64,000 nt of DNA, from the IMG/VR virus record IMGVR_UViG_3300009093_000035, positions 62,001 through 126,000 of that record. One strand, written 5' to 3'. Below the pieces are notes generated by a model. The model worked only from the letters and a program-made list of their open reading frames with translations. It searched no databases and had not been told where the DNA came from. Position numbers and translations under genes: made by a program. Positions 4,889 to 63,807 of the stretch are shown here, piece after piece. Positions within the stretch are counted from its first letter, which is position 1. Every line of letters starts with the position of its first letter.

Positions 4889-4961
4889 AGAAGTGGGTCC
4901 GTCCCTGGAAGAGGCATAGCTGCTAAACCGCTCTACCCTCGATGGGGCGTAAGGTCCTACC

Positions 4962-21619: not shown

Positions 21620-21943
21620 TCAGCTCTTCAGAGCGATCGTGTCGGCCACGTCGTCGCGGATGTCCTTCATCGTCGAGAGAGTGGCGTCGAGAAGCTTCAC
21701 GGCGGTGAGGAGATCTTCGCCGGAAGACATTCGAGCCTTGCTCAAGATCTTGAAACACTCCCAGACGTTGAGGTTCGCTGCCTTCAGTTCGACGGCGCGT
21801 CCTTCGAGGAAGCGACGCTGGATGAGGGACATTTCGCCCCAATCGACCCGCCCCTCCTTCAGGAGGGGAAGGATCGAAGGACGAAGCTCCGGCTTCGCGT
21901 GAGCGAGACGGATCAGCTTCGAACGAAGGTGACGTTCCTTCAC
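21620..21943 (-). CDS. IRLAH-tag protein (107 aa)
   Basis: N-terminus LRSKLIRLAHAKPELRPSILPLLKEG. Confidence 0.8.
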   Translation of the reverse strand: MKERHLRSKLIRLAHAKPELRPSILPLLKEGRVDWGEMSLIQRRFLEGRAVELKAANLNVWECFKILSKARMSSGEDLLTAVKLLDATLSTMKDIRDDVADTIALKS

Positions 21944-21952
21944 GGGCTCTCC

Positions 21953-38682: not shown

Positions 38683-39123
38683 TCAGTCGATGAAGCCGTA
38701 GTCCCGGCCGCGACCGGAATCGTTGGACCAACCCCACCGACCCTCTTCCGGGTCGAAGCCGACGCGACCGATCGACTTGCCGTTCGTGCCGCCGTTCGGA
38801 TGGACGTAGTCCCAAGAAAGAGACCCGCCGAGGCCGCCCTGGGCGTCCGACCACCACTCGATCGAGATCGAGATCTCCGAGAAGAGAGACGAGAAGCCCT
38901 TCGGCACCTCGACCTTGACTGAGTTCTCGTTGAGGTTCGACCACTTCACCGGAGCGTCGATCTTCTTGAGAAGAACGTTGATCGCTTCGAGGGCCTTCTT
39001 CTTCGCCTCGTCGTCGAGCTGAGGAAGCCGACCGGCCTTCTTCTCCAGAAGGGGAAGGATCTCCGAGCGGATCTCGGGGTTCGCGTGGGCGAGACGAATC
39101 AGGGAACGACGGAGGGATGCCAT
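38683..39123 (-). CDS. IRLAH-tag protein, 146 aa
   Basis: MASLRRSLIRLAHANPEIRSEILPLLEKKAG. Confidence 0.8.
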   Translation of the reverse strand: MASLRRSLIRLAHANPEIRSEILPLLEKKAGRLPQLDDEAKKKALEAINVLLKKIDAPVKWSNLNENSVKVEVPKGFSSLFSEISISIEWWSDAQGGLGGSLSWDYVHPNGGTNGKSIGRVGFDPEEGRWGWSNDSGRGRDYGFID

Positions 39124-39156: not shown

Positions 39157-39759
39157 CTACTCCGCGGCGATCCCGTAGAACAAGAAGCCGACCGCCGAGC
39201 CCTGGAGCACGATGTCTCCACGGACCTCCCAAGAGCCGAACCCGAACTTGTCCTTCTCGCCCGTGTCTCGGACACTTCGGATCTTCCCCGGAAGAGCGCC
39301 GCTCGCCCGAGCCCAAGTCCCGAAGGCGGATCGAGCCTCCTCGTCCGAATCGGCTCGAAGCACGACCTTCTTCGCCTTCGTCTCAGCTCGGCCGGAGACG
39401 ACTGGGATCGCAAACGCCGGACCCGACTTCGGGTTGTGTCTCACGTCCTGATTGGCGTAGGTCTTTGCCTCCGCAAGGGTCATGCCCTTCGCCCTGAGGA
39501 CGAACCCCTTCCCGGCCTTCTCCAGGATCGTCCCCGAGTACCCGCCCTCGGAATCGTCGTCACGATACGACCGAACGTCGTTCTCCGCGTCCTGTACGAG
39601 CTTCTCGAAGACCTTCTTCGGATCCGTCCCCTCGCCGTACTCCTGGAACTCGGCGCCGCCTGCGGTCTTCGAGAGGAGCGAAAGAAGTGCCGGTCGTAGC
39701 TCGGGCTTCGAGTGCGCGAGACGGATGAGCTTTCGACGCAGCTTGAGGTCGGGGGTCAC
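39157..39759 (-). CDS. IRLAH-tag protein, 200 aa
   Basis: LRRKLIRLAHSKPELRPALLSLLSKTAG. Confidence 0.8.
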   Translation of the reverse strand: MTPDLKLRRKLIRLAHSKPELRPALLSLLSKTAGGAEFQEYGEGTDPKKVFEKLVQDAENDVRSYRDDDSEGGYSGTILEKAGKGFVLRAKGMTLAEAKTYANQDVRHNPKSGPAFAIPVVSGRAETKAKKVVLRADSDEEARSAFGTWARASGALPGKIRSVRDTGEKDKFGFGSWEVRGDIVLQGSAVGFLFYGIAAE

Positions 39760-39793: not shown

Positions 39794-40492
39794 TCAGGGC
39801 TGAGGCGTCGTCGGCTTCTGGAGCCGTTCGGAGACCTCGATGATCTGGTGGGCCGGAATCCAGCGCGTATCCCGCTCCAGAGGCGGGCGAACGTTTCGAC
39901 CAGTGTTCTGGTTCATCGTCCAGAACACCCAGCGAAGACGGTCCTCCTCTTCGCGCGAGCGGAACTTCTCCTTCACGACCCCGACCTTCCCGGTCTTGAA
40001 GTTCACCCCGTTCACGGTCTCTTCGCGAACCGGGCCGTCCTTGTACTGGATCCGAACCTTGTCGCCCGGCTTCAGGTTCAGCTCTTCGAGCTTCTTCCGA
40101 CCCGGCTCCGCAGCGTCGTCCTTCGCGTCCATCCGGTCCTGACGACGGTCGAGAAGCTCGGCCTTCTCCTTCTCGGTCTTCGCCTTGTCGGCCTTTCCGA
40201 CGTAGCGGATCACCTTCGCGTTCGCGTCGTAGCGGGAACCCTTCGCGGGGAAGCGAAGGTCCCCCGCCGACGAAGAGAGCAGAAGTTCGGCGTTCCCGGT
40301 TCGCTTCGTCGTGACGCTGACGATCGTAGCGGGAATCCAACCCTTCCGCGTCTGGACTTCGACGGAGTCCCCTTCGTGGAAGTACCCGTCCGAAGGCGCA
40401 GCTTCCTTCAAGATCGGGATGAGGTGCTCGCGAAGCTCGGGCTTCTCGTGAGCGAGACGGATCGTCTTCGAGCGGAGTTCGTCGTCGTTCAT
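39794..40492 (-). CDS. IRLAH-tag protein with two SH3/KOW-like repeats, 232 aa
   Basis: LRSKTIRLAHEKPELREHLIPILKEAA; GDSVEV ... WIPATIV and LKPGDKVRIQY segments. Confidence 0.8.
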   Translation of the reverse strand: MNDDELRSKTIRLAHEKPELREHLIPILKEAAPSDGYFHEGDSVEVQTRKGWIPATIVSVTTKRTGNAELLLSSSAGDLRFPAKGSRYDANAKVIRYVGKADKAKTEKEKAELLDRRQDRMDAKDDAAEPGRKKLEELNLKPGDKVRIQYKDGPVREETVNGVNFKTGKVGVVKEKFRSREEEDRLRWVFWTMNQNTGRNVRPPLERDTRWIPAHQIIEVSERLQKPTTPQP

Positions 40493-40519: not shown

Positions 40520-41311
40520 CTAGAACCGACCGCTTACGCTCAGGTACGCTCGCGTAGGGGTGCCTTCGGTCGCCGTGAACTCGAAGGCGAAGGAGAGGCC
40601 CGTTCCGATCAGCGCGATTCCGGAGACCGCGTACATGATGTTCGCCCCGAGCGCGAACGAGGAGATCTCACTGATCTGGGCTTCGGAGCACCCCGAGACC
40701 GTCTGCCCGCACGTAGCGGACAGATTCGAGTAGAGGTCCGAGGCGTGGACTCCGAGACCGATCGCTATCGCCGCCGATACCAGGGTCAAGGCTCCGGCCG
40801 CGATCGTGAAGGTGTAGTCGCCTCGCGGAACCGTAAGAACGGGCTCCTCGGGCTCCGGGAGGGCCTCTACGGGCGGTTCCGGGGTCGGGGCGACGTCCGG
40901 CTGGGGCTCTGGCTCCGGGGCTACCGCGGCCTCCGAGGGCATCCGCGCGAGGCGCCCAGTGAGGTCGGAGATGACCGTCCGTACGGTAACGGCGTCCGAA
41001 GCCTCCGGAAGCTCCCGAAGGTACCGCTGGTACGCCGCCAGGGCGCGCTCCAGGAGGGGGCGGGCGACTGCGTCCGGTAGGGCTCCCGCCGCCCGCTGAT
41101 AGCAGGCGCCGACGTTGTAGAGAAGCTCGGAAGCGTGGACGATCGCGAAGCTCTGCTCGAACTCCTGGGCGCAGTCGATCCAGCGCGATTCCGCGAACGC
41201 GCGATTCCCGCTCTCGAAGTGGGCGCGGGCCGACTCCTCTCGGGTCTGGGCCGAGACCGCCGCCGGGAACACCAGAAGCGAGAAGACGAGAAAAACGTGT
41301 AGATTTCGCAT
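40520..41311 (-). CDS. Exported TPR-repeat protein of myxobacterial type
   Basis: Signal peptide MRNLHVFLVFSLLVFPAAVSA; ARAHFESG ... LLYNVGACY TPRs; Pro-rich linker; C-terminal hydrophobic hairpins ending VSGRF. Confidence 0.75.
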   Translation of the reverse strand: MRNLHVFLVFSLLVFPAAVSAQTREESARAHFESGNRAFAESRWIDCAQEFEQSFAIVHASELLYNVGACYQRAAGALPDAVARPLLERALAAYQRYLRELPEASDAVTVRTVISDLTGRLARMPSEAAVAPEPEPQPDVAPTPEPPVEALPEPEEPVLTVPRGDYTFTIAAGALTLVSAAIAIGLGVHASDLYSNLSATCGQTVSGCSEAQISEISSFALGANIMYAVSGIALIGTGLSFAFEFTATEGTPTRAYLSVSGRF

Positions 41312-41334
41312 AGGGACGTAACCTTTCGCTCGTA

Positions 41335-41361
41335 TAACGAACGAGACGGCCGTCCCTACAC
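41335..41361 (-). promoter_or_regulatory. GTGTAR-N14-TTCGTTA element, copy 1
   Basis: GTGTAG ggacggccgtCTCG TTCGTTA, upstream of the TPR gene. Confidence 0.6.
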
Positions 41362-41364
41362 TAC

Positions 41365-42804
41365 CTACTTCCAGTAGCAAACGAGGGAGATGTCCCCGAT
41401 CGAGCCGGAGTAGGAAATGGTTACCGAGGTCGGTCCGGTCCCGGAGGCCGATACGGTCCCTACCCCGATCCCGTTCCTCGGGGTAGCCATGCAGTAGTCC
41501 GGGGTCGAGGCGAAAGTGATCACGCCTGCGGCGTCCGGAGTGATGACGTCGGGGGTCGATCCGTCGGTCGTGTAGGTCCGAAGGATCTTGTCGACGTGGA
41601 CTGCCCCCGTTCCCGAAGTGATGATCTGAGTCCCCTCGATGTTGATGTTGGACCCTCGAAGATCGAAGACCACACCGTTCGCGGCGTGGATGTTGCTGGT
41701 GAGGAGGTTCGCCACATCGCAGCTACGAAGAGAAGCGTTGAGCGTATTGGACGCAGCCCCCGCCACCTTCAACTTGATCACGGAGTTGATAGTCGCGTTG
41801 TACACATCGAACGCGTTACCAGACACGTCAGCAAAAGGACTCGTCTCGAAGTCGAACGTATCTGCGTTCCCTCCGTATTGGCGATACCTCAGTATCCCAG
41901 TGAGAGAAGATCCGAGTACGTTCCGAAGACTACAACCCTTCAGACCGATATCCCCAGGGGCCCCGATCAGCTTGAAATCGCTCCCCCACCCACATGCCGT
42001 CGCGTCGAGAGACGGCGAGAAGGGAGGCTTATCCACATCTGTCGAATCGTAGGTGATGTCCGTCTTCCCGAACGTGCAGTCCGATACCTTCACGAGACCG
42101 CACGTGAAGATCTCGAACTTCGTAGCTCCGCCGATCTCGAAGTAGACGTTGTTGAAAATGGCGATACCGACGTCTTTCAGACGCCCGCTGAAGGTGGGGC
42201 CGAAGAACCCGCAGTCCTGAAGAACGAGACTTCCGGAGAAATCCCCGCCCATATAGTTCCCCCCGCCACCCGTACCATCGCAGTAGAGCGCGCGACCGGT
42301 TCCAGCCGTCACGGTCGCCCTCAGATTACGGATGCCGAGGTACTTCACATGAGAGGGAGGGACGAAGATATGAGACCCGTCGTTCCCAACGTTCTGGATG
42401 ACGGTACCTCCTGTCCCGAGGAAATCGAACCCAGCACCCTGAACCACGAGATGGTGGAGGCCTGAAGGCCAAACGGGCAAATCGGACGCCCCATTCAGAG
42501 TGTACACCCCAGGACCGATCACCAGGGTGTCCCCGTCCAAACAGGCTTGGAGGGCGCTCTTGAACGTCCCGAAGGGCTTCGAAGCGTCGCCGCGGGACGC
42601 GGACCCGTCGACTCCGGTCGGCGTGAGGTACACGGCGTTCGGAGGACCTACGATCCCTCCCGAAACGGCGAAAGCGGTTTCGGTACCCGTGTCGTCCTTG
42701 TAGTAGGGCCTCTTGTCCGTCTTGAAGTAGAAGCTCGTCGACCCGGCTGCGGGGGTGGCGGGCGTCGTGCCCACTCCAAGATTCACTAGTCCTGCTACGG
42801 TCAT
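41365..42804 (-). CDS. Tail fibre/spike-like protein with right-handed beta-helix (pectin-lyase-like)
   Basis: VYLTPTGVD ... KPFGTFKSALQACLDGDTLVIGPGVY is a typical beta-helix cap; Asn/Gly/Cys-ladder-like repeats follow. Confidence 0.65.
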   Translation of the reverse strand: MTVAGLVNLGVGTTPATPAAGSTSFYFKTDKRPYYKDDTGTETAFAVSGGIVGPPNAVYLTPTGVDGSASRGDASKPFGTFKSALQACLDGDTLVIGPGVYTLNGASDLPVWPSGLHHLVVQGAGFDFLGTGGTVIQNVGNDGSHIFVPPSHVKYLGIRNLRATVTAGTGRALYCDGTGGGGNYMGGDFSGSLVLQDCGFFGPTFSGRLKDVGIAIFNNVYFEIGGATKFEIFTCGLVKVSDCTFGKTDITYDSTDVDKPPFSPSLDATACGWGSDFKLIGAPGDIGLKGCSLRNVLGSSLTGILRYRQYGGNADTFDFETSPFADVSGNAFDVYNATINSVIKLKVAGAASNTLNASLRSCDVANLLTSNIHAANGVVFDLRGSNINIEGTQIITSGTGAVHVDKILRTYTTDGSTPDVITPDAAGVITFASTPDYCMATPRNGIGVGTVSASGTGPTSVTISYSGSIGDISLVCYWK

Positions 42805-42813
42805 GGAACTCCC

Positions 42814-43104
42814 TCAGAGAACGGCGAGCTGCCCGCCGGCTTCTACGGTGATTGCTGAACCAGCCTCGACGATGAAGGGACCTCTCACGAGGTACTGGAA
42901 GTCGGGGGACACATCCACAGTTGTGTTGGAGGAGAGGCGGAAACGGAGAGATCCGTTGCCCATTGCTCCCGCTCCGACTGGAGTCTCGGCCCCCGTGTCG
43001 TCCTTGTAGTAGACGCTCTTGTCACTGCTCTTGGCGTAGAGAGTGATCTTCCCCGTCGGAGGGGTAGGCGCCGATAGGCCGGTAGTGAGCTTCAGTTGAG
43101 CCAT
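42814..43104 (-). CDS. Small fibre-associated protein sharing an N-terminal module with 41365..42804
   Basis: LYAKSSDKSVYYKDDTGAET vs FYFKTDKRPYYKDDTGTET. Confidence 0.65.
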   Translation of the reverse strand: MAQLKLTTGLSAPTPPTGKITLYAKSSDKSVYYKDDTGAETPVGAGAMGNGSLRFRLSSNTTVDVSPDFQYLVRGPFIVEAGSAITVEAGGQLAVL

Positions 43105-43140
43105 GGAGAGTCGTATCAGACTCTCCATAGAGAGATCAGG

Positions 43141-43287
43141 CTAAGCCCGACCCGGCTTCTTTCGGAGCACCCAAATGGGAAACGCCCCGCTCGCGCTTCT
43201 CTCGGCTAGGACGAGATAGAAGTGCAGCAGGGCGCGGAAAACGGCGGGCGAACAATCGGAAAGGTCGGAGTAGTCAACGGTGTCCAT
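43141..43287 (-). CDS. Possible 48-aa ORF (not in the track)
   Basis: ATG at 43287 to TAG at 43141 fills the gap; GGAGG lies only 1 nt from the ATG, which weakens it. Confidence 0.3.
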   Translation of the reverse strand: MDTVDYSDLSDCSPAVFRALLHFYLVLAERSASGAFPIWVLRKKPGRA

Positions 43288-43324
43288 ACCTCCCTAATCG
43301 CCGCGAGGAGGGGAACCCGGAAGA

Positions 43325-43543
43325 CTATTCGTTCAGGAAGATCCGGATGGAGCACCGAGGACACCCGACGTACTTCCGGTCTGACGAGACCATGTAGAAG
43401 GGATCCTCTTCGGTATGGATCTCCGAACGACCGAAGGTGAACTCGGCCTTACATCGACCGCAGGTCGCCCGACCGATCTGAAGCTCCCCGCAGCGAGAGG
43501 CGCGAGACTGACGACGAGCTTTCCGTTGGGAGCGCCCGCTCAC
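43325..43543 (-). CDS. Small Zn-finger-like protein
   Basis: CGRC ... CPRC; GTGA-coupled to the ligase stop. Confidence 0.55.
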   Translation of the reverse strand: MSGRSQRKARRQSRASRCGELQIGRATCGRCKAEFTFGRSEIHTEEDPFYMVSSDRKYVGCPRCSIRIFLNE

Positions 43544-44658
43544 GCCTTCTCCAGGTACCGATTCCCGACGAGCTTCAAGATCACGCGGCCCAACTGAGGG
43601 TCGATCCGCTCGACCTCGGGTTTGACCACGACGCCTTCGGCGTAGTGGGGCTTGAATTTTCCCCCGCTGAGGACACTGTCGGCTTCAGCGAGAGCTTCGA
43701 TCCCCTCGGCGAGGAAAGGTCCGCGATAGACGACAGGAACGCGAGACAGACCGTCCCGACCGTCGCCTCCGAACAGATCCCGAGCGTCCATCCACTTCCG
43801 GTCCCCGAGGTAGACGTCAAAGACGAGGAACGCGGGAAACCCCTGTGGGATCCCGTAGTGCATCTTCTTCGTCGACCGGAAGACCTCGCCGTAGAGGATC
43901 TTGTCTTCGTTTGCTCGGCACCACGTCTCGATCCACGGGTTGGCTCTCAGAGCCGCCCAGAAGACCGACGGGTTCTGGCTCCGGTCCCAGGCCTTCAGGT
44001 CGAGATCTCCGCCCATCTTCCCGGTCCCGGTGTCGATCGTGACGATTCCTGGCTCGACGCTCTCGTCCGGAGGACGCTTCCATTCCGTCCGAGACCCCAC
44101 CCACATCCGACCTCCGCGGAAGGCGTAGCGGGCGCTCTCCCCGTTGATCTTCTCCGTGACGATCACCGGTTCCCCTGGAGTGAAGAGGTCTCGCCACTTC
44201 CTCTTCGTGGCCCTCTCCCCTCCGCGGAAGTTCTCCATGTCGTAGGCGGAGAGATGGGCGAGAGAATCGATCGGACGCTCGCCTTCCTGGCTCTGGATGT
44301 TCGCGTATGGATCGTAGCGGACGATCCCGAGGCGCTCCATGACGTTGTCCCCTTCGGAGACCTTGTCCTTCAACGCCCCGAGCTTCATCAGGAGCCCCTG
44401 GGAGTAGATCCCACGGAACTTCCGGACCTTGATTCGGCGATCGTCGGTCGGTAGGTAGCTCCAGAGAGACGAGAAGGGATGCTCGTTCCCCGGCAAGACG
44501 TAGTCCGGCTCGACGTAGATCGCGAGGTCTCCCGTCGCGAAGTCTTCCGTGCGGACGACGCACGTGTACCCGTCGATCTCGACAAGGCCCAGGGTATCCG
44601 CGGCGGGGTGCTTCTTCACCTCACCGAGTCGAATCACGAAGACGCCGTGGGTACTCAT
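43540..44658 (-). CDS. RNA ligase, Rnl2/DRB0094-like, with N-terminal OB (tRNA-binding-like) module
   Basis: HPAADTL N-domain; motif I TEKINGES; YGEV (III), FDV (IIIa), EGVVVK (IV), ILKLV (V). Confidence 0.88.
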   Translation of the reverse strand: MSTHGVFVIRLGEVKKHPAADTLGLVEIDGYTCVVRTEDFATGDLAIYVEPDYVLPGNEHPFSSLWSYLPTDDRRIKVRKFRGIYSQGLLMKLGALKDKVSEGDNVMERLGIVRYDPYANIQSQEGERPIDSLAHLSAYDMENFRGGERATKRKWRDLFTPGEPVIVTEKINGESARYAFRGGRMWVGSRTEWKRPPDESVEPGIVTIDTGTGKMGGDLDLKAWDRSQNPSVFWAALRANPWIETWCRANEDKILYGEVFRSTKKMHYGIPQGFPAFLVFDVYLGDRKWMDARDLFGGDGRDGLSRVPVVYRGPFLAEGIEALAEADSVLSGGKFKPHYAEGVVVKPEVERIDPQLGRVILKLVGNRYLEKA

Positions 44659-44858
44659 GGTTTCTTCTCGCTCTCGATCTCCGCCAACCGACGGAACTTT
44701 CGGATCTCCCCCACGACTCGCCAGATGTGAACATGGCAGTCGTAGCGATGAGCGCTTCCCGGAGCGTATTGATGACGAGCGGGAAGGAGGGCGGTCCGGA
44801 GCCAGGTTACTCTCCGCGCCACCTTCTCCGCCGCCGGTTCCTTGAAGATGTCGCTCAC
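44655..44858 (-). CDS. Small hypothetical protein (~67 aa)
   Basis: GTGA/ATGA-type coupling on both sides. Confidence 0.5.
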   Translation of the reverse strand: MSDIFKEPAAEKVARRVTWLRTALLPARHQYAPGSAHRYDCHVHIWRVVGEIRKFRRLAEIESEKKP

Positions 44859-45121
44859 TTCCGGAAGACGACTCCTTCGAAGTTGTCCGTGGGACGAGAG
44901 ATCAACACCCCAGCGAGGCGAAAATCCGCAGACAGGACTCGGAGATCTTGAAGGATCTGGTCGTGGCGGGAATCCCCGTTCTCCGGCTTTGCTCCTCCGC
45001 AACGCCTCCACCAGCGGTAATCCTCCAAGAGCCTCGAAGCGCCCTCGAAGTCTCGGTAGCTGAGACGTTCCAGAGCGGAAGTCAAGGTCGCTTCCGGATC
45101 CATATCCACGTTGTCGCTCAT
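44855..45121 (-). CDS. Small hypothetical protein (~88 aa)
   Basis: MSDNVDMDPEATL...; ATGA overlap with the upstream stop. Confidence 0.55.
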   Translation of the reverse strand: MSDNVDMDPEATLTSALERLSYRDFEGASRLLEDYRWWRRCGGAKPENGDSRHDQILQDLRVLSADFRLAGVLISRPTDNFEGVVFRK

Positions 45122-45516
45122 GACCCCTCGAAGATGATCTTGTGCATCTGACGAAGATGGATCCCGGTACCCGTCCAGCGACCCGGATCTGTCCAGCGGT
45201 AGTGGATCGAACTCGCCCCTTCGTAGGGACCCCGCTTCGTCTTTGGGGCGGCGTCCACCTTCGCGTTGTTCTGGGCGGCGTAGGCCATCCACTGGCGCTC
45301 CCCCTCGGCGATCGCCGTCTCTCGGTCGACCCCCTCCCAGAACATGACGTAGACCCGACGCTGGATGAAATACATCTCGGACCCGGCGACGTCCGCCCCC
45401 GACATGCTCTTCAGAGCGGTGTCGCCCAGCGCCATCGACTGGCGCATCTGGACGAAGAGCTTCTCTTCCTGCTCAGGGGTCACGGAGGCCCCTCGGACGT
45501 TCGTGTTCTGGTACAC
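45118..45516 (-). CDS. Hypothetical protein (132 aa)
   Basis: GTG start after GGAGGA; codon bias like its neighbours. Confidence 0.65.
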   Translation of the reverse strand: MYQNTNVRGASVTPEQEEKLFVQMRQSMALGDTALKSMSGADVAGSEMYFIQRRVYVMFWEGVDRETAIAEGERQWMAYAAQNNAKVDAAPKTKRGPYEGASSIHYRWTDPGRWTGTGIHLRQMHKIIFEGS

Positions 45517-45525
45517 AGGGTCCTC

Positions 45526-45933
45526 CTACGGTTTGTGAACGCCGTCGCGGAGCCAGTCGGGGAAGTAGTCCGAGACCTCCTCGGGAAGACCGTCAGCGAC
45601 CCGCGCCAAGATCTGGGAGACCTTCTCGATGTCCTTCGTGCACTCGACGGTAAGGCGCTCGAACCGAGCCACGATGTCCGGGGCGTTCCCGCAGACCCCG
45701 GTCGCCCAGTGGGCCGCCGTCTTCGCGTAGCCGGTATGGCCGTCCCGACGCTCCAGGAGCATCTCCCGCCACCCTCGAAGACCCCCGAGGGTAATCTCGT
45801 GACGCTTCTCGCCCACGACGCGGCGGATGTCTTCCCCTCGGTAGTACATCCGGTTGTAGAGACAGAAGCTGTCGATCTGGGAACGGAGGGTTCCCAGATC
45901 TTTCTTCGTCCACTTCTTCGCGCCCCGGCTCAT
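45526..45933 (-). CDS. Hypothetical protein (~135 aa)
   Basis: MSRGAKKW... start at 45933 coupled to the upstream stop. Confidence 0.6.
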   Translation of the reverse strand: MSRGAKKWTKKDLGTLRSQIDSFCLYNRMYYRGEDIRRVVGEKRHEITLGGLRGWREMLLERRDGHTGYAKTAAHWATGVCGNAPDIVARFERLTVECTKDIEKVSQILARVADGLPEEVSDYFPDWLRDGVHKP

Positions 45934-46313
45934 CCGTAGAGGACCTCTCCGAAGAAGCAGCACTGGACGAACGCGTCGCCCGTATTCGCGTCGTAGTTGT
46001 CCTGGAGGAAGTCCGAGAAGTGCTTCGGGTACTTCGCCGACAGAACCTGGAGGCCCTGAGCGATCGTCTTCCCGTCGAGACGGTGGACCTTGTCGTTCGC
46101 GTAGAAATCCTCGCAGACGACCGCTCCGCCCTGGAGGGGGAAGTCGATATAGTTGTAGATCTTCTGACCCGAAAGGGTCGGCTTGACCTCCGTGCGGGGC
46201 TTCCGATAGCCCTTGATCTTGCACCAGTAGCCCACGCCGCCTTCGAAAGCGGAACACAGCAGGCCAGCGAGCTTCTCGGAGGTGATCTCGGTCTTGACGG
46301 TGAAGTTCTTCAT
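45930..46313 (-). CDS. Hypothetical protein (127 aa)
   Basis: GAGGAG RBS; preceded by the conserved promoter-like element. Confidence 0.7.
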   Translation of the reverse strand: MKNFTVKTEITSEKLAGLLCSAFEGGVGYWCKIKGYRKPRTEVKPTLSGQKIYNYIDFPLQGGAVVCEDFYANDKVHRLDGKTIAQGLQVLSAKYPKHFSDFLQDNYDANTGDAFVQCCFFGEVLYG

Positions 46314-46337
46314 GGTGTCTTCGTCTCCTCGTCGTTG

Positions 46338-46364
46338 TAACGAACGAGGGGGGAGGTTCTACAC
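46338..46364 (-). promoter_or_regulatory. GTGTAR-N14-TTCGTTA element, copy 2
   Basis: GTGTAG aacctcccccCTCG TTCGTTA. Confidence 0.6.
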
Positions 46365-46805
46365 TCCGAAGTCTCTTTTTGGAGCGAGCGAGAGCGCCGT
46401 CTCGGTCGTCTCTTCCCCCGAATCCCAGAGAACCTTGACGCCTTCCGGAAGAACGGCCTGGACTTTCCCGAGCTTTCCCGGGACCTTACGGGAGAAGACC
46501 TCGTCGTTCTTCCCGAGAGCTTTCCGGGCTTCGGTCTCCCGGGCCGCGTCGCGAAGTTCCCCGGAAGTCCCTCCTTCGAGGGCTCGGGAGATCTCGTAGA
46601 TCGTCGCGAGCTTCGCCCGAAGACTGAGCTGGGAATCCTTCCCGAGCTTCGCGTCCACGTAGTCCGCGAGCGTCCGGCCCTTTGCGGCCAGAAACGGGCT
46701 CGGATGCGGGATCTTCGCCAGCTTCGCCCTGGTTTCCGGCTTCGAGTAGTCGGAGATCGCCCTCTCCACCATCGAATTCGGGTCGCCTTTTCCTCGTGTG
46801 CGCAT
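46359..46805 (-). CDS. Hypothetical protein (148 aa)
   Basis: ATG after AGGA; C-terminal SH3-like GKVQAV ... VKVLWD segment. Confidence 0.65.
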   Translation of the reverse strand: MRTRGKGDPNSMVERAISDYSKPETRAKLAKIPHPSPFLAAKGRTLADYVDAKLGKDSQLSLRAKLATIYEISRALEGGTSGELRDAARETEARKALGKNDEVFSRKVPGKLGKVQAVLPEGVKVLWDSGEETTETALSLAPKRDFGV

Positions 46806-46815
46806 CGTGTTCCTG

Positions 46816-46842
46816 TAACGAACGAGGGGACGTCCGCTACAC
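46816..46842 (-). promoter_or_regulatory. GTGTAR-N14-TTCGTTA element, copy 3
   Basis: GTGTAG cggacgtcccCTCG TTCGTTA. Confidence 0.6.
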
Positions 46843-47277
46843 CTTCTCGTACGCGGGCCACTCGGCGGGCCACTGGTTGAGGAGCGTCTGGATCCTCTCC
46901 AGCTGGAGCTGGATGCTCTCGACCGGGACTCCGTGGGCGTTCCGAGCCGCGAGAACTTCCGGATCGAGTTCGGACCGGAAGACGACGAACTCGACCCGGT
47001 AGCCGTGGCGCTCCGCGAGCTTCACGTAGGGAGTGATCTCGGAGACCGTCTGGTTCGTGTTGTCGAGCACGACGAGAGGGAGGCCCTCCTCGAAGGCGCG
47101 GCGAACCTTCGTAGAGCACATCTGATGGGCGTACCCCAGGAACGCGGGATTGAACTTGTACTCGTCCCCGACCATGAAGAAGTCGTCGGCGGAACAGACG
47201 TACGCGTCCGGGAGAGCGTTACACAGCGTGCTCTTACCCGAGCCGCTCGCGCCGATCAGAATCTTGAAGGTCCTCAT
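46837..47277 (-). CDS. P-loop kinase (AAA_33 / PNK-kinase-like)
   Basis: GASGSGKST Walker A, CSADDF, VVLDNTN, LAARNAHGVP; typical of N4BP2/PNK-type kinases. Confidence 0.85.
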   Translation of the reverse strand: MRTFKILIGASGSGKSTLCNALPDAYVCSADDFFMVGDEYKFNPAFLGYAHQMCSTKVRRAFEEGLPLVVLDNTNQTVSEITPYVKLAERHGYRVEFVVFRSELDPEVLAARNAHGVPVESIQLQLERIQTLLNQWPAEWPAYEKV

Positions 47278-47284
47278 AGTCCTC

Positions 47285-47311
47285 TAACGAAGGGGGGTCC
47301 TCTTCTTACAC
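47285..47311 (-). promoter_or_regulatory. GTGTAR-N14-TTCGTTA element, copy 4
   Basis: GTGTAA gaagaggacccccc TTCGTTA. Confidence 0.55.
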
Positions 47312-47347
47312 CCGGGCGTAAGGAACTGAGAAGGAGAGAAGCGCTCG

Positions 47348-47893
47348 ATGACCCAAGACCCCACCGATTTCCTGGAGAGCCGGTTCGATTTCAACGAGTT
47401 CGTGCGGAACGCGCGAATTGGTTACGCCGAGTTGTGTGGGCGTCGGGAGGCTCTCGAAGCCACGATCGCTTCCGCGAGCGAGGAGCTGGTGAGCGTGAGG
47501 GATCAGATCGAGAAGCTGGAGAAGGTCCTCGACTCGTCCGGGATCGAGGCGGAGCCGAGCCTCGCTCGTCCGCGGACCTCCTACGTCTCCGCCACGACGA
47601 ACCAGGTCATCGAGGAGCTGAGGGAGAATCTCTCCTCCCGATCCGAGATCCACCCCGAGGCCACGATCATCTCCCTCGTCATCTCGAAGCTTCCCGACGC
47701 GAAGCCGAAGTCGATCTCCGCCGCGCTCTTCCGAATGGTCCAGCAACAGAAGCTCATCCGGTCCGGCAAGCGCGGGGACTACGCCTACCAGATCCCGCTC
47801 AGTCAGAGCGAAGTGATCGAGACTCTGACCACTCCGGCCACTCCGGCCGGACCGCGAACCTCCGACGCTGGACGCGACGGGTACACGGGCTGA
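47348..47893 (+). CDS. Coiled-coil + winged-helix-like protein
   Basis: AAGGAG RBS; heptad N-half; KSISAALFRMV ... LIRSGKRGDY is wHTH-like. Confidence 0.6.
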   Translation: MTQDPTDFLESRFDFNEFVRNARIGYAELCGRREALEATIASASEELVSVRDQIEKLEKVLDSSGIEAEPSLARPRTSYVSATTNQVIEELRENLSSRSEIHPEATIISLVISKLPDAKPKSISAALFRMVQQQKLIRSGKRGDYAYQIPLSQSEVIETLTTPATPAGPRTSDAGRDGYTG

Positions 47894-51894: not shown

Positions 51895-52009
51895 GGTCCT
51901 CGTCTTTCTTGGGTCGCCACCAACAGGTGTTAGATCCGACGAGATCTTACGCCTCGACGAAGGCCTCGATCACGAATCAGACGCCAAAAACGACCTTCTC
52001 GATCACTAT

Positions 52010-62553: not shown

Positions 62554-63807
62554 TCAGAGCTTCTTCATGACGTCGGTCCACTCTTCGAGGGACTTCCGGT
62601 TCCGACCCACATCGGCCTCCGTAGCGGGCTGGACCACTCCGTTGATCGTGAATCCGGAGCTGCCGTTGGCGTTCGCCTCCAGGAGCTTCTCGTAGAGTTT
62701 CACCTTCATCGGGACGAACTTCTTCAAGATCGTCGTGTCCGCTCCGGGGAAGTCCGAGAGGAACTCCGACATCTGAGCCGCCTCGGAATACTCCCCGAGG
62801 CCGGTCCACTGAACGTGGCCCTTCTCGTCGAGGTACATCGCTCCGGCGAACTTCAGGTAGGTCGAAGCCTTCGGCTTGTTCCAGCGGCCCGTCTTCGGGT
62901 CCATCGTCTGGGAGAGGAAACGGTAGCCCTTCCCGGAGTTGAACTCCAGCCAGAACTTCGCCTGGGTTCGGAGCTTGAACCCGTAGGGGTAGTCGTCGAC
63001 CACATAGGCCGAGTTCGGATCAGTGTGGCCGTAGAGGGGCTTCTTCGTCGAGGCCTTCTTCTCGAACTTCCCGCCCTTGGACTCGATCTTCTTCCGATCC
63101 GCGTCGGTGAGCCGATCCTTCTTGGCCTTGGAGTCCATCATCTCCTGCCACTCGGCTTCGTCTTCGTTCTTCGCCGGTCGCCAGGCGATCACTTCCTTCT
63201 CGGAAGCGGCGTGGTTCGACGGCATCCAGAGATCGTTCTCCTTCGCCGCGAACTCCTCCAGCTTCTGGAGGAACTTCATGTCCGCATCATCGAGAGCCTC
63301 GTAGGCCTCGTCGAGCGTCTTGTACTTCTCGTCGAAGTAGTCCCCCACCATCGCCAAGAACTTCTTCTCCACGTCGGACTCGGCGCCCTTCATGTGGTTC
63401 TTGATCCCCTTGATCATGCTCTGAGTCATGATCCCGCCCGTCTTCGAGAGGAGGGGGAGGAGAAGGGGGCGAAGCTCGGGCTTCTCGTGAGCGAGCCGAA
63501 TCGTAGCTGAACGGAGGTTGGTCATGGCTCGCTTCTCGTTGGGATGTTCTCGGAGATACCGCTCGCGAATAGAGGGATTCTCCCACTGAGGGAAGATGAA
63601 CTCCATCCCCTCCTGCTCGTAGGGAACGCGATTCTTCTTCAGCCAAGCGACGAACAGGTTGGCGGTGCCCCTGGTCCCCCACTCGACTACCGCCCGCGAA
63701 TCGTTCGCCTGGGGATTGCGCGTCGAGTAACTTGAGTTGCCGAACGTGTTCTCATCGTCCGCATCTCTCATCGCTCTGACGAGATCTTCGAATTCGTGGA
63801 AAGCCAT
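62554..63807 (-). CDS. Multidomain IRLAH-tag protein (417 aa)
   Basis: Internal EKRA-MTNLRSATIRLAHEKPELRPLLLPLLSKTGG; C-domain YGHTDPNSAYVVDDYPYGFKLR after EKKAS. Confidence 0.75.
   Translation of the reverse strand: MAFHEFEDLVRAMRDADDENTFGNSSYSTRNPQANDSRAVVEWGTRGTANLFVAWLKKNRVPYEQEGMEFIFPQWENPSIRERYLREHPNEKRAMTNLRSATIRLAHEKPELRPLLLPLLSKTGGIMTQSMIKGIKNHMKGAESDVEKKFLAMVGDYFDEKYKTLDEAYEALDDADMKFLQKLEEFAAKENDLWMPSNHAASEKEVIAWRPAKNEDEAEWQEMMDSKAKKDRLTDADRKKIESKGGKFEKKASTKKPLYGHTDPNSAYVVDDYPYGFKLRTQAKFWLEFNSGKGYRFLSQTMDPKTGRWNKPKASTYLKFAGAMYLDEKGHVQWTGLGEYSEAAQMSEFLSDFPGADTTILKKFVPMKVKLYEKLLEANANGSSGFTINGVVQPATEADVGRNRKSLEEWTDVMKKL

What the first reader, a model, noticed from the sequence alone, without database searches (positions are those of the whole stretch)
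41335..47311. Conserved bipartite element GTGTAR-N14-TTCGTTA upstream of four accessory genes
Seen directly: four copies with identical 14-nt spacing (41335-41361, 46338-46364, 46816-46842, 47285-47311), all on the minus strand and all just upstream of starts; three extend to CTCGTTCGTTA. Established: ECF-type sigma promoters have TGTAA/GAAC-like -35 and CGT-containing -10 elements. Inference: an early/middle promoter read by a phage or host ECF sigma factor. Two copies end only 7-10 nt before the ATG, implying near-leaderless mRNAs or an operator role instead.
Basis: partly seen in the sequence, partly recalled or inferred. Interest (0 to 1): 0.62.

Follow-up and report, generated by a model that had tools for sequence, protein, structure and literature searches.

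The report
Megaphage ECF-type promoter family
The repeated GTGTAR-N14-TTCGTTA element is a real, phage-specific promoter class of a soil megaphage, built like a bacterial ECF-sigma promoter and most likely read by a very divergent sigma factor that the phage itself encodes, giving leaderless or very short-leader mRNAs for accessory genes.

Summary
The four copies are exact (0 expected by chance). The 248.6-kb viral contig holds 20 copies, all intergenic and co-oriented with the gene immediately downstream. It is the most over-represented bipartite pattern in the genome. Related megaphage contigs with no nucleotide identity keep the same architecture (hexamer-N16-CGNTN) with lineage-specific boxes: 122 sites in seven genomes against 1 in reversed-pattern controls. 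The geometry equals that of actinobacterial SigH/SigE promoters (GGAACA-N16-CGTT). Start codons or Shine-Dalgarno sequences begin exactly 8 nt after the box, which puts the hexamer at -34..-29 and the last T of CGTT at -9, as in M. tuberculosis SigH. No RNA polymerase gene was detected. The phage encodes a fast-evolving 265-aa protein, outside the window, whose predicted fold matches ECF sigma factors (sigma2 plus sigma4). One sigma2 residue co-varies with the third base of the -10-like box in all 13 resolvable lineages. Driven genes are accessory: an RNA-repair-type kinase, NAD salvage, nucleotide metabolism and small ORFans. This is a new member of a known kind (phage sigma plus cognate promoters) and is moderately interesting.

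The parts
47285..47311 (-). Promoter copy 4: GTGTAAGAAGAGGACCCCCCTTCGTTA. Predicted -35 hexamer at 47311-47306 and -10 box CGTTA at 47289-47285. The predicted +1 is at 47277, the A of the ATG, so the mRNA would be leaderless.
   Evidence: Exact match; PWM 27.3 bits; 7 nt between the final A and the ATG.
46840..47277 (-). Gene driven by copy 4: 146-aa P-loop kinase (AAA_33, polynucleotide-kinase-like).
   Evidence: Pfam AAA_33 E 3.5e-13; phrog_2071 ATPase E 6.6e-28 and phrog_505 polynucleotide kinase E 3.7e-9.
46816..46842 (-). Promoter copy 3: GTGTAGCGGACGTCCCCTCGTTCGTTA. The TAG inside the hexamer is the stop codon of the kinase gene. Predicted +1 at 46808, giving a 3-nt leader before the ATG at 46805.
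   Evidence: Exact match; PWM 36.7 bits; sequence read.
46362..46805 (-). Gene driven by copy 3: 148-aa ORFan.
   Evidence: High-GC3 ORF; no Pfam or PHROG match.
46338..46364 (-). Promoter copy 2: GTGTAGAACCTCCCCCCTCGTTCGTTA. The TAG in the hexamer is the stop codon of the preceding gene. Predicted +1 at 46330, the G of GAGGAG, giving a 17-nt leader that begins with the SD.
   Evidence: Exact match; PWM 40.2 bits; sequence read.
45933..46313 (-). First gene driven by copy 2: 127 aa, conserved phage protein of unknown function. It is followed by co-oriented small genes at 45529-45933, 45121-45516 and 44858-45121.
   Evidence: phrog_2355 E 9.6e-17; gene chain.
41335..41361 (-). Promoter copy 1: GTGTAGGGACGGCCGTCTCGTTCGTTA. 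Predicted +1 at 41327 (G), giving a 16-nt leader.
   Evidence: Exact match; PWM 35.6 bits; sequence read.
40523..41311 (-). First gene driven by copy 1: 263 aa with a hydrophobic N-terminus and a Pro-rich middle. It is followed by co-oriented genes at 39797-40492, 39160-39759 and 38686-39123.
   Evidence: ORF chain; only weak Pro-rich Pfam hits; the next gene has a sub-threshold SH3_2 hit.

Best explanation
The element is a class of phage promoters with the architecture of an extracytoplasmic-function (group 4) sigma promoter. It has a -35 hexamer GTGTAR, a rigid 16-bp gap and a -10 box CGTTA, with flanks giving (G)A-GTGTAR-N10-CYCGYY-CGTTA-C. Transcription most likely starts 8 nt after the final A. 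In the 7-nt class the mRNA is therefore leaderless, and otherwise it begins with, or just before, a GAGG/GGAG Shine-Dalgarno 10-17 nt ahead of the ATG. The host core RNA polymerase most likely reads the element when it carries a phage-encoded, very divergent ECF-like sigma factor. That protein is 265 aa, lies at G000 204484-205281 (+) outside the window, and belongs to a family of 36 proteins. The regulon is the accessory, probably early/middle gene set: the AAA_33 kinase and small ORFans in the window, and elsewhere NUDIX-NAMPT-NMNAT-like NAD salvage, a CCA-adding/poly(A)-polymerase-family enzyme, RlaP, dCTP deaminase, RNase HII and an SprT-like protease. Shown: the motif's existence, number, placement and orientation; its conservation with lineage-specific drift; and its geometry.
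For: (1) Statistics: 4 of 4 copies in the window against 0 expected. G000 has 20 sites of at least 27 bits with an empty gap below them. An unbiased count of all 5-mer/gap/5-mer pairs ranks this motif first in G000.
(2) Placement: every copy is intergenic, co-oriented and 3-25 nt from an ORF start. One pair is divergent and back-to-back.
(3) Conservation without sequence homology: G001 shares no DNA identity beyond short repeats and none of its first downstream proteins are homologous, yet it has 9 copies against 0 in the control.
(4) Same architecture, drifting boxes: RTGTAAT/CGTTA in G006 (22 sites), GGGTAA/CGTTA in G003 (8), GGGGAA/CGTTA in G004, GTGTAAA/CGCTT in G002, CTAAAA/CGATA in W01 (48) and GGTTAG/CGGTA in L274 and L279. 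The total is 122 sites against 1 reversed control.
(5) Register: the base 8 nt after the box is a purine in 110 of 122 sites. The modal SD start is at that same position. The start codon is exactly there in 7 of 28 G000+G001 sites. This places the hexamer at -34..-29 and T at -9, as in Mtb SigH (PMC6411747). Hexamer-N16-CGTT equals C. glutamicum SigH/SigE promoters (PMC10012870). A rigid spacer and stringent boxes are ECF hallmarks (PMC6411747).
(6) Reader: no RNAP beta or beta-prime domain is found in G000 or in any relative, including the 485-kb W01.
(8) Association: every genome with a family member that I could analyse at length has such a motif (G000, G002, G003, G004, G006, W01). W01 has no Pfam-detectable sigma2 protein other than this family.
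(9) Co-variation: the protein evolves fast (34-54% identity) while the neighbouring core genes are 68-84% identical. Sigma2 position N145 is N or L with CGTTA (8 lineages) and H with CGCTT/CGCTA, CGGTA or CGATA (5 lineages in 3 subgroups), with no exception. The most deviant -35 boxes go with the most deviant sigma4 recognition helices.
(10) In G000 a 33.8-bit variant copy lies 215 nt upstream of the sigma gene itself, which fits the autoregulation usual for ECF sigmas.
Against: - There is no transcript evidence at all. No RNA run holds this DNA, so the +1 and the promoter function are inferred.
- Sequence methods do not recognise the 265-aa protein as a sigma. Pfam gives only Sigma70_r4_2 at E 0.023, below cut-off. 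A profile search against PDB sequences gives nothing relevant. hhalign against G002's Pfam-positive sigma gives probability 0.3.
- The -35 hexamer lacks the canonical ECF 'AAC'.
- The residue/base co-variation was found post hoc on nine lineages. The four later cases include only two independent lineages. Three lineages were unresolvable.
- G002 and G003 have nearly identical sigma4 recognition helices but different hexamers (GTGTAA against GGGTAA).
- The contig is only about 56% complete, so other factors may be encoded in the missing half.
- The PF00940 (T7-type RNAP) search had no positive control. Several 1,200-1,800-aa ORFans have no PHROG match, so a very divergent polymerase cannot be excluded.
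- Autoregulation is seen only in G000.
Confidence: 0.6

Rival explanations
1. The motif is a promoter read by a host sigma factor, either an ECF sigma such as a SigH/SigE/EcfG-like factor or an unusual housekeeping sigma. The phage borrows a host regulon's promoter for its early genes.
For: The -10 box CGTT and the N16 geometry are exactly those of host ECF promoters (PMC10012870, PMC6411747). A phage without its own RNAP must have its first genes read by a host holoenzyme. G000 and G001 share the identical motif although they are otherwise unrelated at the DNA level, which a shared host would also explain.
Against: The boxes differ between phages whose core proteins are 70-84% identical, which would need a different host specificity for each. 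The variation tracks a phage-encoded sigma-like protein. The very high information content, with no weak copies, is typical of phage-private promoters.
Confidence: 0.17
2. The reader is the clade-wide 203-aa sigma-like protein (G000 164373-164984, next to a NusG-like gene). It would act alone or with a partner, as a T4 gp33/gp55-style or 'minimal sigma' system.
For: It is the only protein on the contig above the Pfam sigma cut-offs (Sigma70_r4 E 5.5e-8, Sigma70_r4_2 E 2.1e-7). It carries PHROG 'RNA polymerase sigma factor' labels. It is present in every relative. Two HTH-like halves could in principle contact two boxes.
Against: Its model matches isolated sigma4 domains only, with about 60-70 residues aligned and no sigma2, so it has no module for a -10 box or for melting. 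It is 78-84% identical among G000, G002, G003, G004, G005 and G006, and 63% identical in W01, while the promoter boxes differ among them. The family has more than 1,000 members, far wider than the motif. A second, invariant element (GCGTAAG-N7-ATG) is a more natural target for a conserved factor.
Confidence: 0.08
3. The element is an operator or activator site for a phage DNA-binding regulator rather than the core promoter.
For: Two copies lie so close to the ATG that a bound protein would occlude the start. Phage regulators often have many identical sites.
Against: The element is not palindromic and is strictly co-oriented with the downstream gene. It keeps a fixed register to the SD or ATG in seven genomes. 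No other promoter-like element lies between it and the gene, and in tandem genes the element fills the whole intergenic space. Its geometry coincides base for base with ECF promoters.
Confidence: 0.07
4. A phage-encoded RNA polymerase reads the element. It would be either a very divergent enzyme among the large ORFans or one encoded in the missing half of the genome.
For: The contig is about 56% complete. The T7-type RNAP search lacked a positive control. Ten large window proteins, up to 1,778 aa, were scanned against PHROGs and nine gave no match.
Against: No beta or beta-prime double-psi-barrel domains are found in G000 or in six relatives, including a 485-kb genome with 48 motif copies. Known phage RNAP promoters are contiguous (T7-like), hairpins (N4) or short AT-rich or uracil-dependent motifs, not -35/-10 bipartite elements with a variable spacer (my own knowledge; see also PMC9209446 for AR9).
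Confidence: 0.05

Closest known systems
Actinobacterial SigH/SigE (ECF12/ECF14-type) and alphaproteobacterial EcfG promoters: GGAAC(A)-N16-CGTT
   Same: Hexamer-N16-CGTT geometry and a rigid spacer. The -35 hexamer is at -34..-29 and the key T at -9, using the inferred +1. Box stringency is very high. The cognate sigma has only sigma2 and sigma4, and its best structural match is Mtb SigH (PMC10012870, PMC6411747).
   Different: The -35 box is GTGTAR (or GGGTAA, GGGGAA, CTAAAA, GGTTAG in relatives) instead of GGAAC. The -10 box extends to CGTTA-C. The sigma is phage-encoded and undetectable by the Pfam sigma2 model. It has an N-terminal extension and a beta-hairpin (residues 167-183) in the sigma2-sigma4 linker. 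No anti-sigma factor was identified.
Phage-encoded sigma factors that redirect host RNAP (SPO1 gp28 and gp33/34, T4 gp55/gp33, and the 'group 2' jumbo-phage sigmas of Iyer et al. 2021, PMC7824862)
   Same: The phage lacks its own RNAP and carries sigma-like genes. A private promoter consensus sits in front of a defined gene class. A second 'minimal', sigma4-only factor is also present, as Iyer et al. describe.
   Different: Those sigmas are either minimal single-HTH forms or RpoD-like. This one is ECF-like in fold and in promoter geometry. The ECF reclassification explicitly could not capture phage ECF sigmas (PMC7826278). The promoter boxes and the sigma diversify together within one clade.
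Leaderless mRNAs of Actinobacteria, Deinococcus-Thermus and archaea
   Same: The start codon sits 7 nt after the -10-like box with no room for an SD. This holds in 7 of 28 sites in G000+G001, and also in a second element, GCGTAAG-N6-8-ATG.
   Different: The arrangement is inferred from spacing only. Most copies have a short leader instead, beginning with the SD.

Membership tests
ECF (group 4) sigma-dependent promoter | Bipartite -35/-10 elements with a rigid spacer of fixed length | tested here: met
   Spacing is invariant in 20 of 20 G000 sites and in 122 sites of seven genomes. A hexamer-to-CGTT gap of 16 matches published SigH/SigE promoters (PMC10012870).
ECF (group 4) sigma-dependent promoter | -10 element containing CGT or GTT | tested here: met
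   CGTTA is invariant in the 28 G000+G001 sites, which were selected with that pattern. The independent de novo pair count recovers GTGTA-N17-CGTTA as the top pattern.
ECF (group 4) sigma-dependent promoter | -35 element with the conserved 'AAC' (GGAAC-like) core | tested here: not met
   The hexamer is GTGTA(A/G) and the next base is not C. Relatives have GGGTAA, GGGGAA, CTAAAA or GGTTAG. Only the purine pair at hexamer positions 5-6 is shared.
ECF (group 4) sigma-dependent promoter | Transcription start about 6-9 nt downstream of the -10 element | not testable with these tools
   No RNA run holds the DNA. Indirect support: a purine at +8 in 110 of 122 sites, and the SD or ATG beginning there.
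ECF (group 4) sigma-dependent promoter | A cognate ECF sigma in the same genome, often autoregulated and paired with an anti-sigma | tested here: inconclusive
   An ECF-like fold is predicted for the 265-aa protein. A variant motif lies upstream of its gene in G000 only. No anti-sigma was identified and none was specifically sought.
Sigma-70 family, group 4 (the 265-aa protein) | Sigma2 and sigma4 domains detectable by the family's sequence models | tested here: not met
   There is no Sigma70_r2 hit. Sigma70_r4_2 scores E 0.023, 14.8 bits against a cut-off of 25.7, in 1 of 5 orthologues.
Sigma-70 family, group 4 (the 265-aa protein) | Two-domain sigma2-linker-sigma4 fold without sigma1.1 or sigma3 | tested here: met
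Sigma-70 family, group 4 (the 265-aa protein) | Binds core RNAP and confers promoter specificity | not testable with these tools
   The host is unknown and no complex prediction was attempted. Only co-variation with the boxes supports specificity.
Leaderless mRNA | The 5' end of the transcript coincides with the start codon | not testable with these tools
   The only evidence is the exact 7-nt spacing in window copy 4 and in six other G000 and G001 sites.

The most novel reading that the evidence does not exclude
A clade of soil megaphages of roughly 0.25-0.5 Mb carries a radiating set of private ECF-like sigma/promoter pairs. Both promoter boxes and the sigma's reading heads diversify together while the geometry stays fixed. 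Each lineage's accessory-gene programme would thus be insulated from the host and from co-infecting relatives. This would be a natural library of orthogonal sigma-promoter pairs. The sigma gene itself would be controlled through a conserved hairpin immediately upstream of its start codon.
Probability: 0.35. Interest if true: 0.65.

Novelty: new member of a known kind. Interest (0 to 1): 0.5.

Why it matters
**Transcription map for uncultivated megaphages.** The finding gives a concrete, testable transcription map for viruses known only from metagenomes. It shows where one gene class starts, what probably reads it, and that many of its mRNAs have no leader or a minimal one.

**Phage ECF-like sigmas.** Published ECF classifications explicitly miss these proteins (PMC7826278). 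Here one is linked to a defined promoter family.

**Specificity determinants.** Natural variation in the boxes across lineages could reveal what sets ECF promoter specificity. The variants could also supply orthogonal sigma/promoter pairs for synthetic biology.

**Annotation.** The motif marks true gene starts in genomes where most ORFs have no homologues. It also flags the accessory and counter-defence-type gene set, including NAD salvage and RNA repair.

Tried and rejected
- **RNA evidence.** The look-up of sequencing runs found only four DNA runs from rhizosphere or soil metagenomes and no RNA run. Read laying was therefore not used, because contigs of DNA runs cannot show a start site.
- **Direct motif scans of IMG/VR.** Scans with two extended patterns gave mostly single chance hits. 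Only G001 was a true relative.
- **Sequence-profile identification of the 265-aa protein.** Pfam on five orthologues, a profile against PDB sequences (top hits were stathmin) and hhalign against G002's sigma were all negative.
- **PF00940 search.** It had no positive control and is not evidence of absence.
- **PHROG annotation of ten large window proteins.** It gave one hit only, a photolyase/radical-SAM-like family. I could not show that motif-less genes are structural or late.
- **Residue-level reading of the -35 hexamer from the sigma4 recognition helix.** The trend is only qualitative. G002 and G003 have nearly the same helix but different hexamers.
- **Motif resolution in L277, L280 and L283.** It failed because 9-20 kb held too few copies.
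- **Literature search for LR745208.** It found nothing.
- **Host identity.** It is not established. Chloroflexota-labelled neighbours in the Atlas search are only a lead.

Full report
**What the window is.** The window is bases 62001-126000 of a single 248,579-bp IMG/VR viral contig with 61.4% G+C. The record is classed as linear, and CheckV estimates it about 56% complete. One of its proteins also occurs on a 472,929-bp contig, so the whole genome is probably near 0.47 Mb. The DNA is held only by rhizosphere and soil metagenome runs. The contig carries 46 tRNA and tmRNA genes. It is an uncultivated megaphage.

**The observation.** The pattern GTGTAR-N14-TTCGTTA matches exactly four times in the window, at the coordinates given and all on the minus strand. 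None is expected in 100 dinucleotide-preserving shuffles. Three copies extend to CTCGTTCGTTA. The final A lies 23, 24, 10 and 7 nt from the start codon of the next ORF. In copies 2 and 3 the TAG of GTGTAG is the stop codon of the preceding gene. Three small genes in a row therefore each have their own copy, filling the whole intergenic space.

**Extension to the genome.**
- The strict pattern occurs 13 times on the contig and a relaxed one, TGTAR-N16-CGTTA, 19 times.
- A weight matrix built from the sites finds 20 sites of at least 27 bits and nothing between 17 and 27 bits. Markov-shuffled genomes give none at 18 bits or more.
- An unbiased count of all 5-mer/gap/5-mer pairs ranks GTGTA-N17-CGTTA first in the genome.
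- Every copy is intergenic and co-oriented with the ORF directly downstream. One pair is divergent and back-to-back.
- The logo is (G)A-GTGTA-R-N10-C-Y-C-G-Y-Y-CGTTA-C.

**Conservation.**
- A 97.6-kb contig, G001, has essentially no nucleotide identity to G000. None of its first downstream proteins are homologous to those of G000. Yet it has nine copies of the same motif against none of the reversed control.
- Five further contigs and the 485-kb GenBank phage LR745208.1 (W01) share core genes with G000.
- They carry the same architecture with different boxes: RTGTAAT/CGTTA in G006, GGGTAA/CGTTA in G003, GGGGAA/CGTTA in G004, GTGTAAA/CGCTT in G002 and CTAAAA/CGATA in W01, which has 48 copies, most in its first 160 kb.
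- Three more lineages reached through the sigma-like gene add GTGTAA/CGTTA (L275, L276, L281) and GGTTAG/CGGTA (L274, L279).
- In seven genomes there are 122 sites against one in reversed-pattern controls.

**Where transcription would start.**
- In G000 and G001 the start codon lies exactly 7 nt after the final A in seven of 28 sites, which leaves no room for a ribosome-binding site.
- In most other sites, and almost uniformly in G006 and W01, a GAGG or GGAG begins at that same position, 8 nt after the box, with the ATG 10-17 nt further on.
- The base at that position is a purine in 110 of 122 sites.
- I infer a start 8 nt after the box, giving leaderless mRNAs or mRNAs that begin with their Shine-Dalgarno.
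- This is inference only, because no RNA run holds the DNA.
- In the window the predicted starts are 47277 (the A of the ATG), 46808, 46330 and 41327.

**Comparison with known promoters.**
- With that start, the hexamer occupies -34 to -29 and the last T of CGTT is at -9.
- For M. tuberculosis SigH, the -35 element GGAAYA spans -34 to -29 and the -10 element is GTT with 'master' nucleotide T(-9). Both boxes and the spacer length are stringently required, and the authors present this stringency as general for ECF sigmas (PMC6411747).
- C. glutamicum SigH/SigE promoters are tabulated as GGAACA-N16-CGTT (PMC10012870).
- The phage element is hexamer-N16-CGTT(A). The geometry and the -10 box are those of this ECF class, but the -35 box is not, because it lacks AAC.

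**What could read it.**
- No beta or beta-prime RNAP domain is detectable in G000 or in any relative, including the 485-kb genome.
- The T7-type search had no positive control and proves nothing.
- This fits the 'group 2' jumbo phages of Iyer et al., which lack an RNAP and carry sigma factors (PMC7824862).
- Two sigma-like genes lie on the contig, both outside the window.

**The 203-aa protein (G000 164373-164984).**
- It passes the Pfam sigma region-4 cut-offs and sits next to a NusG-like gene.
- It belongs to a family of more than 1,000 proteins.
- It is 78-84% identical across the close relatives and 63% identical in W01.
- Its model matches only isolated sigma4 domains. It is a 'minimal sigma' with nothing to read a -10 box.
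- Its conservation does not fit the variable boxes.

**The 265-aa protein (G000 204484-205281).**
- It is missed by sequence models, apart from a sub-threshold region-4 hit.
- Its family is small, 36 proteins, and fast-evolving, 34-54% identity.
- Its AlphaFold model (pLDDT 81) retrieves almost only sigma factors, led by ECF sigmas in initiation complexes.
- The order, coverage and exclusivity of the hits agree, however, and a language-model neighbour search independently returns only sigma70-family clusters.
- W01 has 48 motif copies, a member of this family (E 2e-56) and no Pfam-detectable sigma2 protein.

**Linking protein and motif.**
- The most deviant -35 boxes, GGGGAA in G004 and CTAAAA in W01, go with the most deviant sigma4 recognition helices.
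- At sigma2 position 145 (AKT-N-RDR), lineages with CGTTA have N, or L in G004. That covers eight lineages.
- All lineages with another third base have H: CGCTT or CGCTA in G002 and L278, CGGTA in L274 and L279, and CGATA in W01. That covers five lineages in three subgroups. There is no exception among the 13 resolved lineages.
- I derived the rule from the first nine lineages and then tested it on six more contigs. Four were resolvable and all four fitted, but only two of those are independent lineages. This is suggestive, not proof.
- G002 and G003 have almost the same recognition helix but different hexamers, so a simple residue code for the -35 box is not evident.
- In G000 a strong variant copy (GTGGA, 33.8 bits) lies 215 nt upstream of the sigma gene, as expected for an autoregulated ECF sigma. 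The relatives do not show this.

**What the motif drives.**
- In the window: a 146-aa AAA_33 polynucleotide-kinase-like protein, a 148-aa ORFan, a 127-aa conserved phage protein followed by small genes, and a 263-aa protein with a hydrophobic N-terminus followed by three genes.
- Elsewhere: a NUDIX-NAMPT-CinA/cytidylyltransferase-like NAD-salvage operon, a PolyA_pol-family (CCA-adding type) enzyme, an SprT-like protease, RlaP, dCTP deaminase, RNase HII and many ORFans.
- None of the very large ORFs has a copy, but their function is unknown.
- 'Early/middle' is therefore plausible but not shown.

**Rivals.**
- A host ECF sigma is the main rival at about 0.17. It explains the geometry, but not why the boxes differ among close relatives in step with a phage protein.
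- The 203-aa factor (0.08), an operator role (0.07) and an undetected phage polymerase (0.05) are less likely, for the reasons given in their entries.

**Verdict.** It is sharpened to a phage-encoded, structurally ECF-like sigma and a promoter family that co-diversifies with it across a megaphage clade. In kind this is known, because phage sigma factors with private promoters and ECF promoter architecture are both established. Here it is a new, uncharacterised member with some unusual traits: a non-canonical -35 box, leaderless or SD-first mRNAs, and a sigma invisible to sequence models. Interest is moderate at 0.5. The claim would rise sharply with a single 5'-end mapping or a reconstitution experiment.

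Noticed in passing
window 47315-47322 (+), 4946-4953 (+), 51946-51953 (-); genome-wide in G000, G001, G003, G006: A second promoter-like element, (G)GCGTAAG(G), is followed by a start codon 6-8 nt later (leaderless-type). GGCGTAAG occurs 14 times in G000 against 2 for the reversed control, 12 against 2 in G001 and 18 against 4 in G003. It is weakly enriched in G006 and G002 and not enriched in W01 or G004. Its sequence is invariant across lineages, unlike the main motif. The copy at 47315 is the divergent partner of motif copy 4 and precedes the + strand gene 47348-47893. It may be the target of a conserved factor such as the 203-aa minimal sigma.
   Followed up: partly
outside the window: G000 204437-204461 (+); also G002 74080, G003 6006, G004 24465, G006 98460, and in L275 and L276: A 25-nt imperfect palindrome or hairpin, GCCCGAAAGTC-N-YTGACTTCAGGGC, occurs once per genome, always 5-27 nt upstream of the ATG of the 265-aa sigma-like gene. 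Its arms are conserved and its 3-nt centre varies (RNAfold -12.6 kcal/mol). L274 and L277 have a different hairpin (AGGGTC-N3-GACCC) at the same place. It is probably a dedicated translational operator, processing site or DNA operator for the sigma gene.
   Followed up: partly
window 40416-40477 (-), 21881-21945 (-), 63449-63504 (-); also G000 126370-126426, 141362-141427, 188338-188418, and G001: At least seven otherwise different proteins begin with the same roughly 25-residue N-terminal peptide...LRSKTIRLAHEKPELR(E/P)xLLPLL.... It shows up as short DNA repeats shared even with the unrelated-at-DNA-level G001. It could be a common targeting or packaging propeptide, but its function is unknown.
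   Followed up: partly
outside the window: G000 188442-197000 (-): A large array of 46 tRNA genes plus a tmRNA with tag peptide ANDSSYDQLAQAA, as reported by ARAGORN.
   Followed up: no
just past the window end: G000 126470-129474 (-), that is from window coordinate about 64470 onward: A motif-driven operon encodes a NUDIX hydrolase, a nicotinamide phosphoribosyltransferase (NAMPT) and a CinA/cytidylyltransferase-like protein, which together form an NAD-salvage set. From my own knowledge, such sets in phages are thought to counter NAD-depleting defence systems.
   Followed up: no
outside the window: G000 164373-165623 (-), = L002:1174-2424: A sigma4-only 'minimal sigma' of 203 aa, from a family of more than 1,000 proteins on contigs up to 485 kb, is always adjacent to a NusG-like/antiterminator-like gene (phrog_6386). 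The pair is 68-84% identical across the clade.
   Followed up: partly
window 476-29042 (-): Very large ORFs of 1,509, 1,684, 1,180 and 1,778 aa, together with several of about 370-460 aa out to 32818, have no PHROG match at E<=1e-5. Only 33205-34683 matches a photolyase/radical-SAM-like family (phrog_9252, E 7e-195).
   Followed up: no
G002:316-1119 (+) (locus L122): Relative G002 encodes an additional 268-aa sigma factor that passes the Pfam Sigma70_r2 cut-off. It has no homologue on the other contigs analysed and is unrelated to the 265-aa family.
   Followed up: partly
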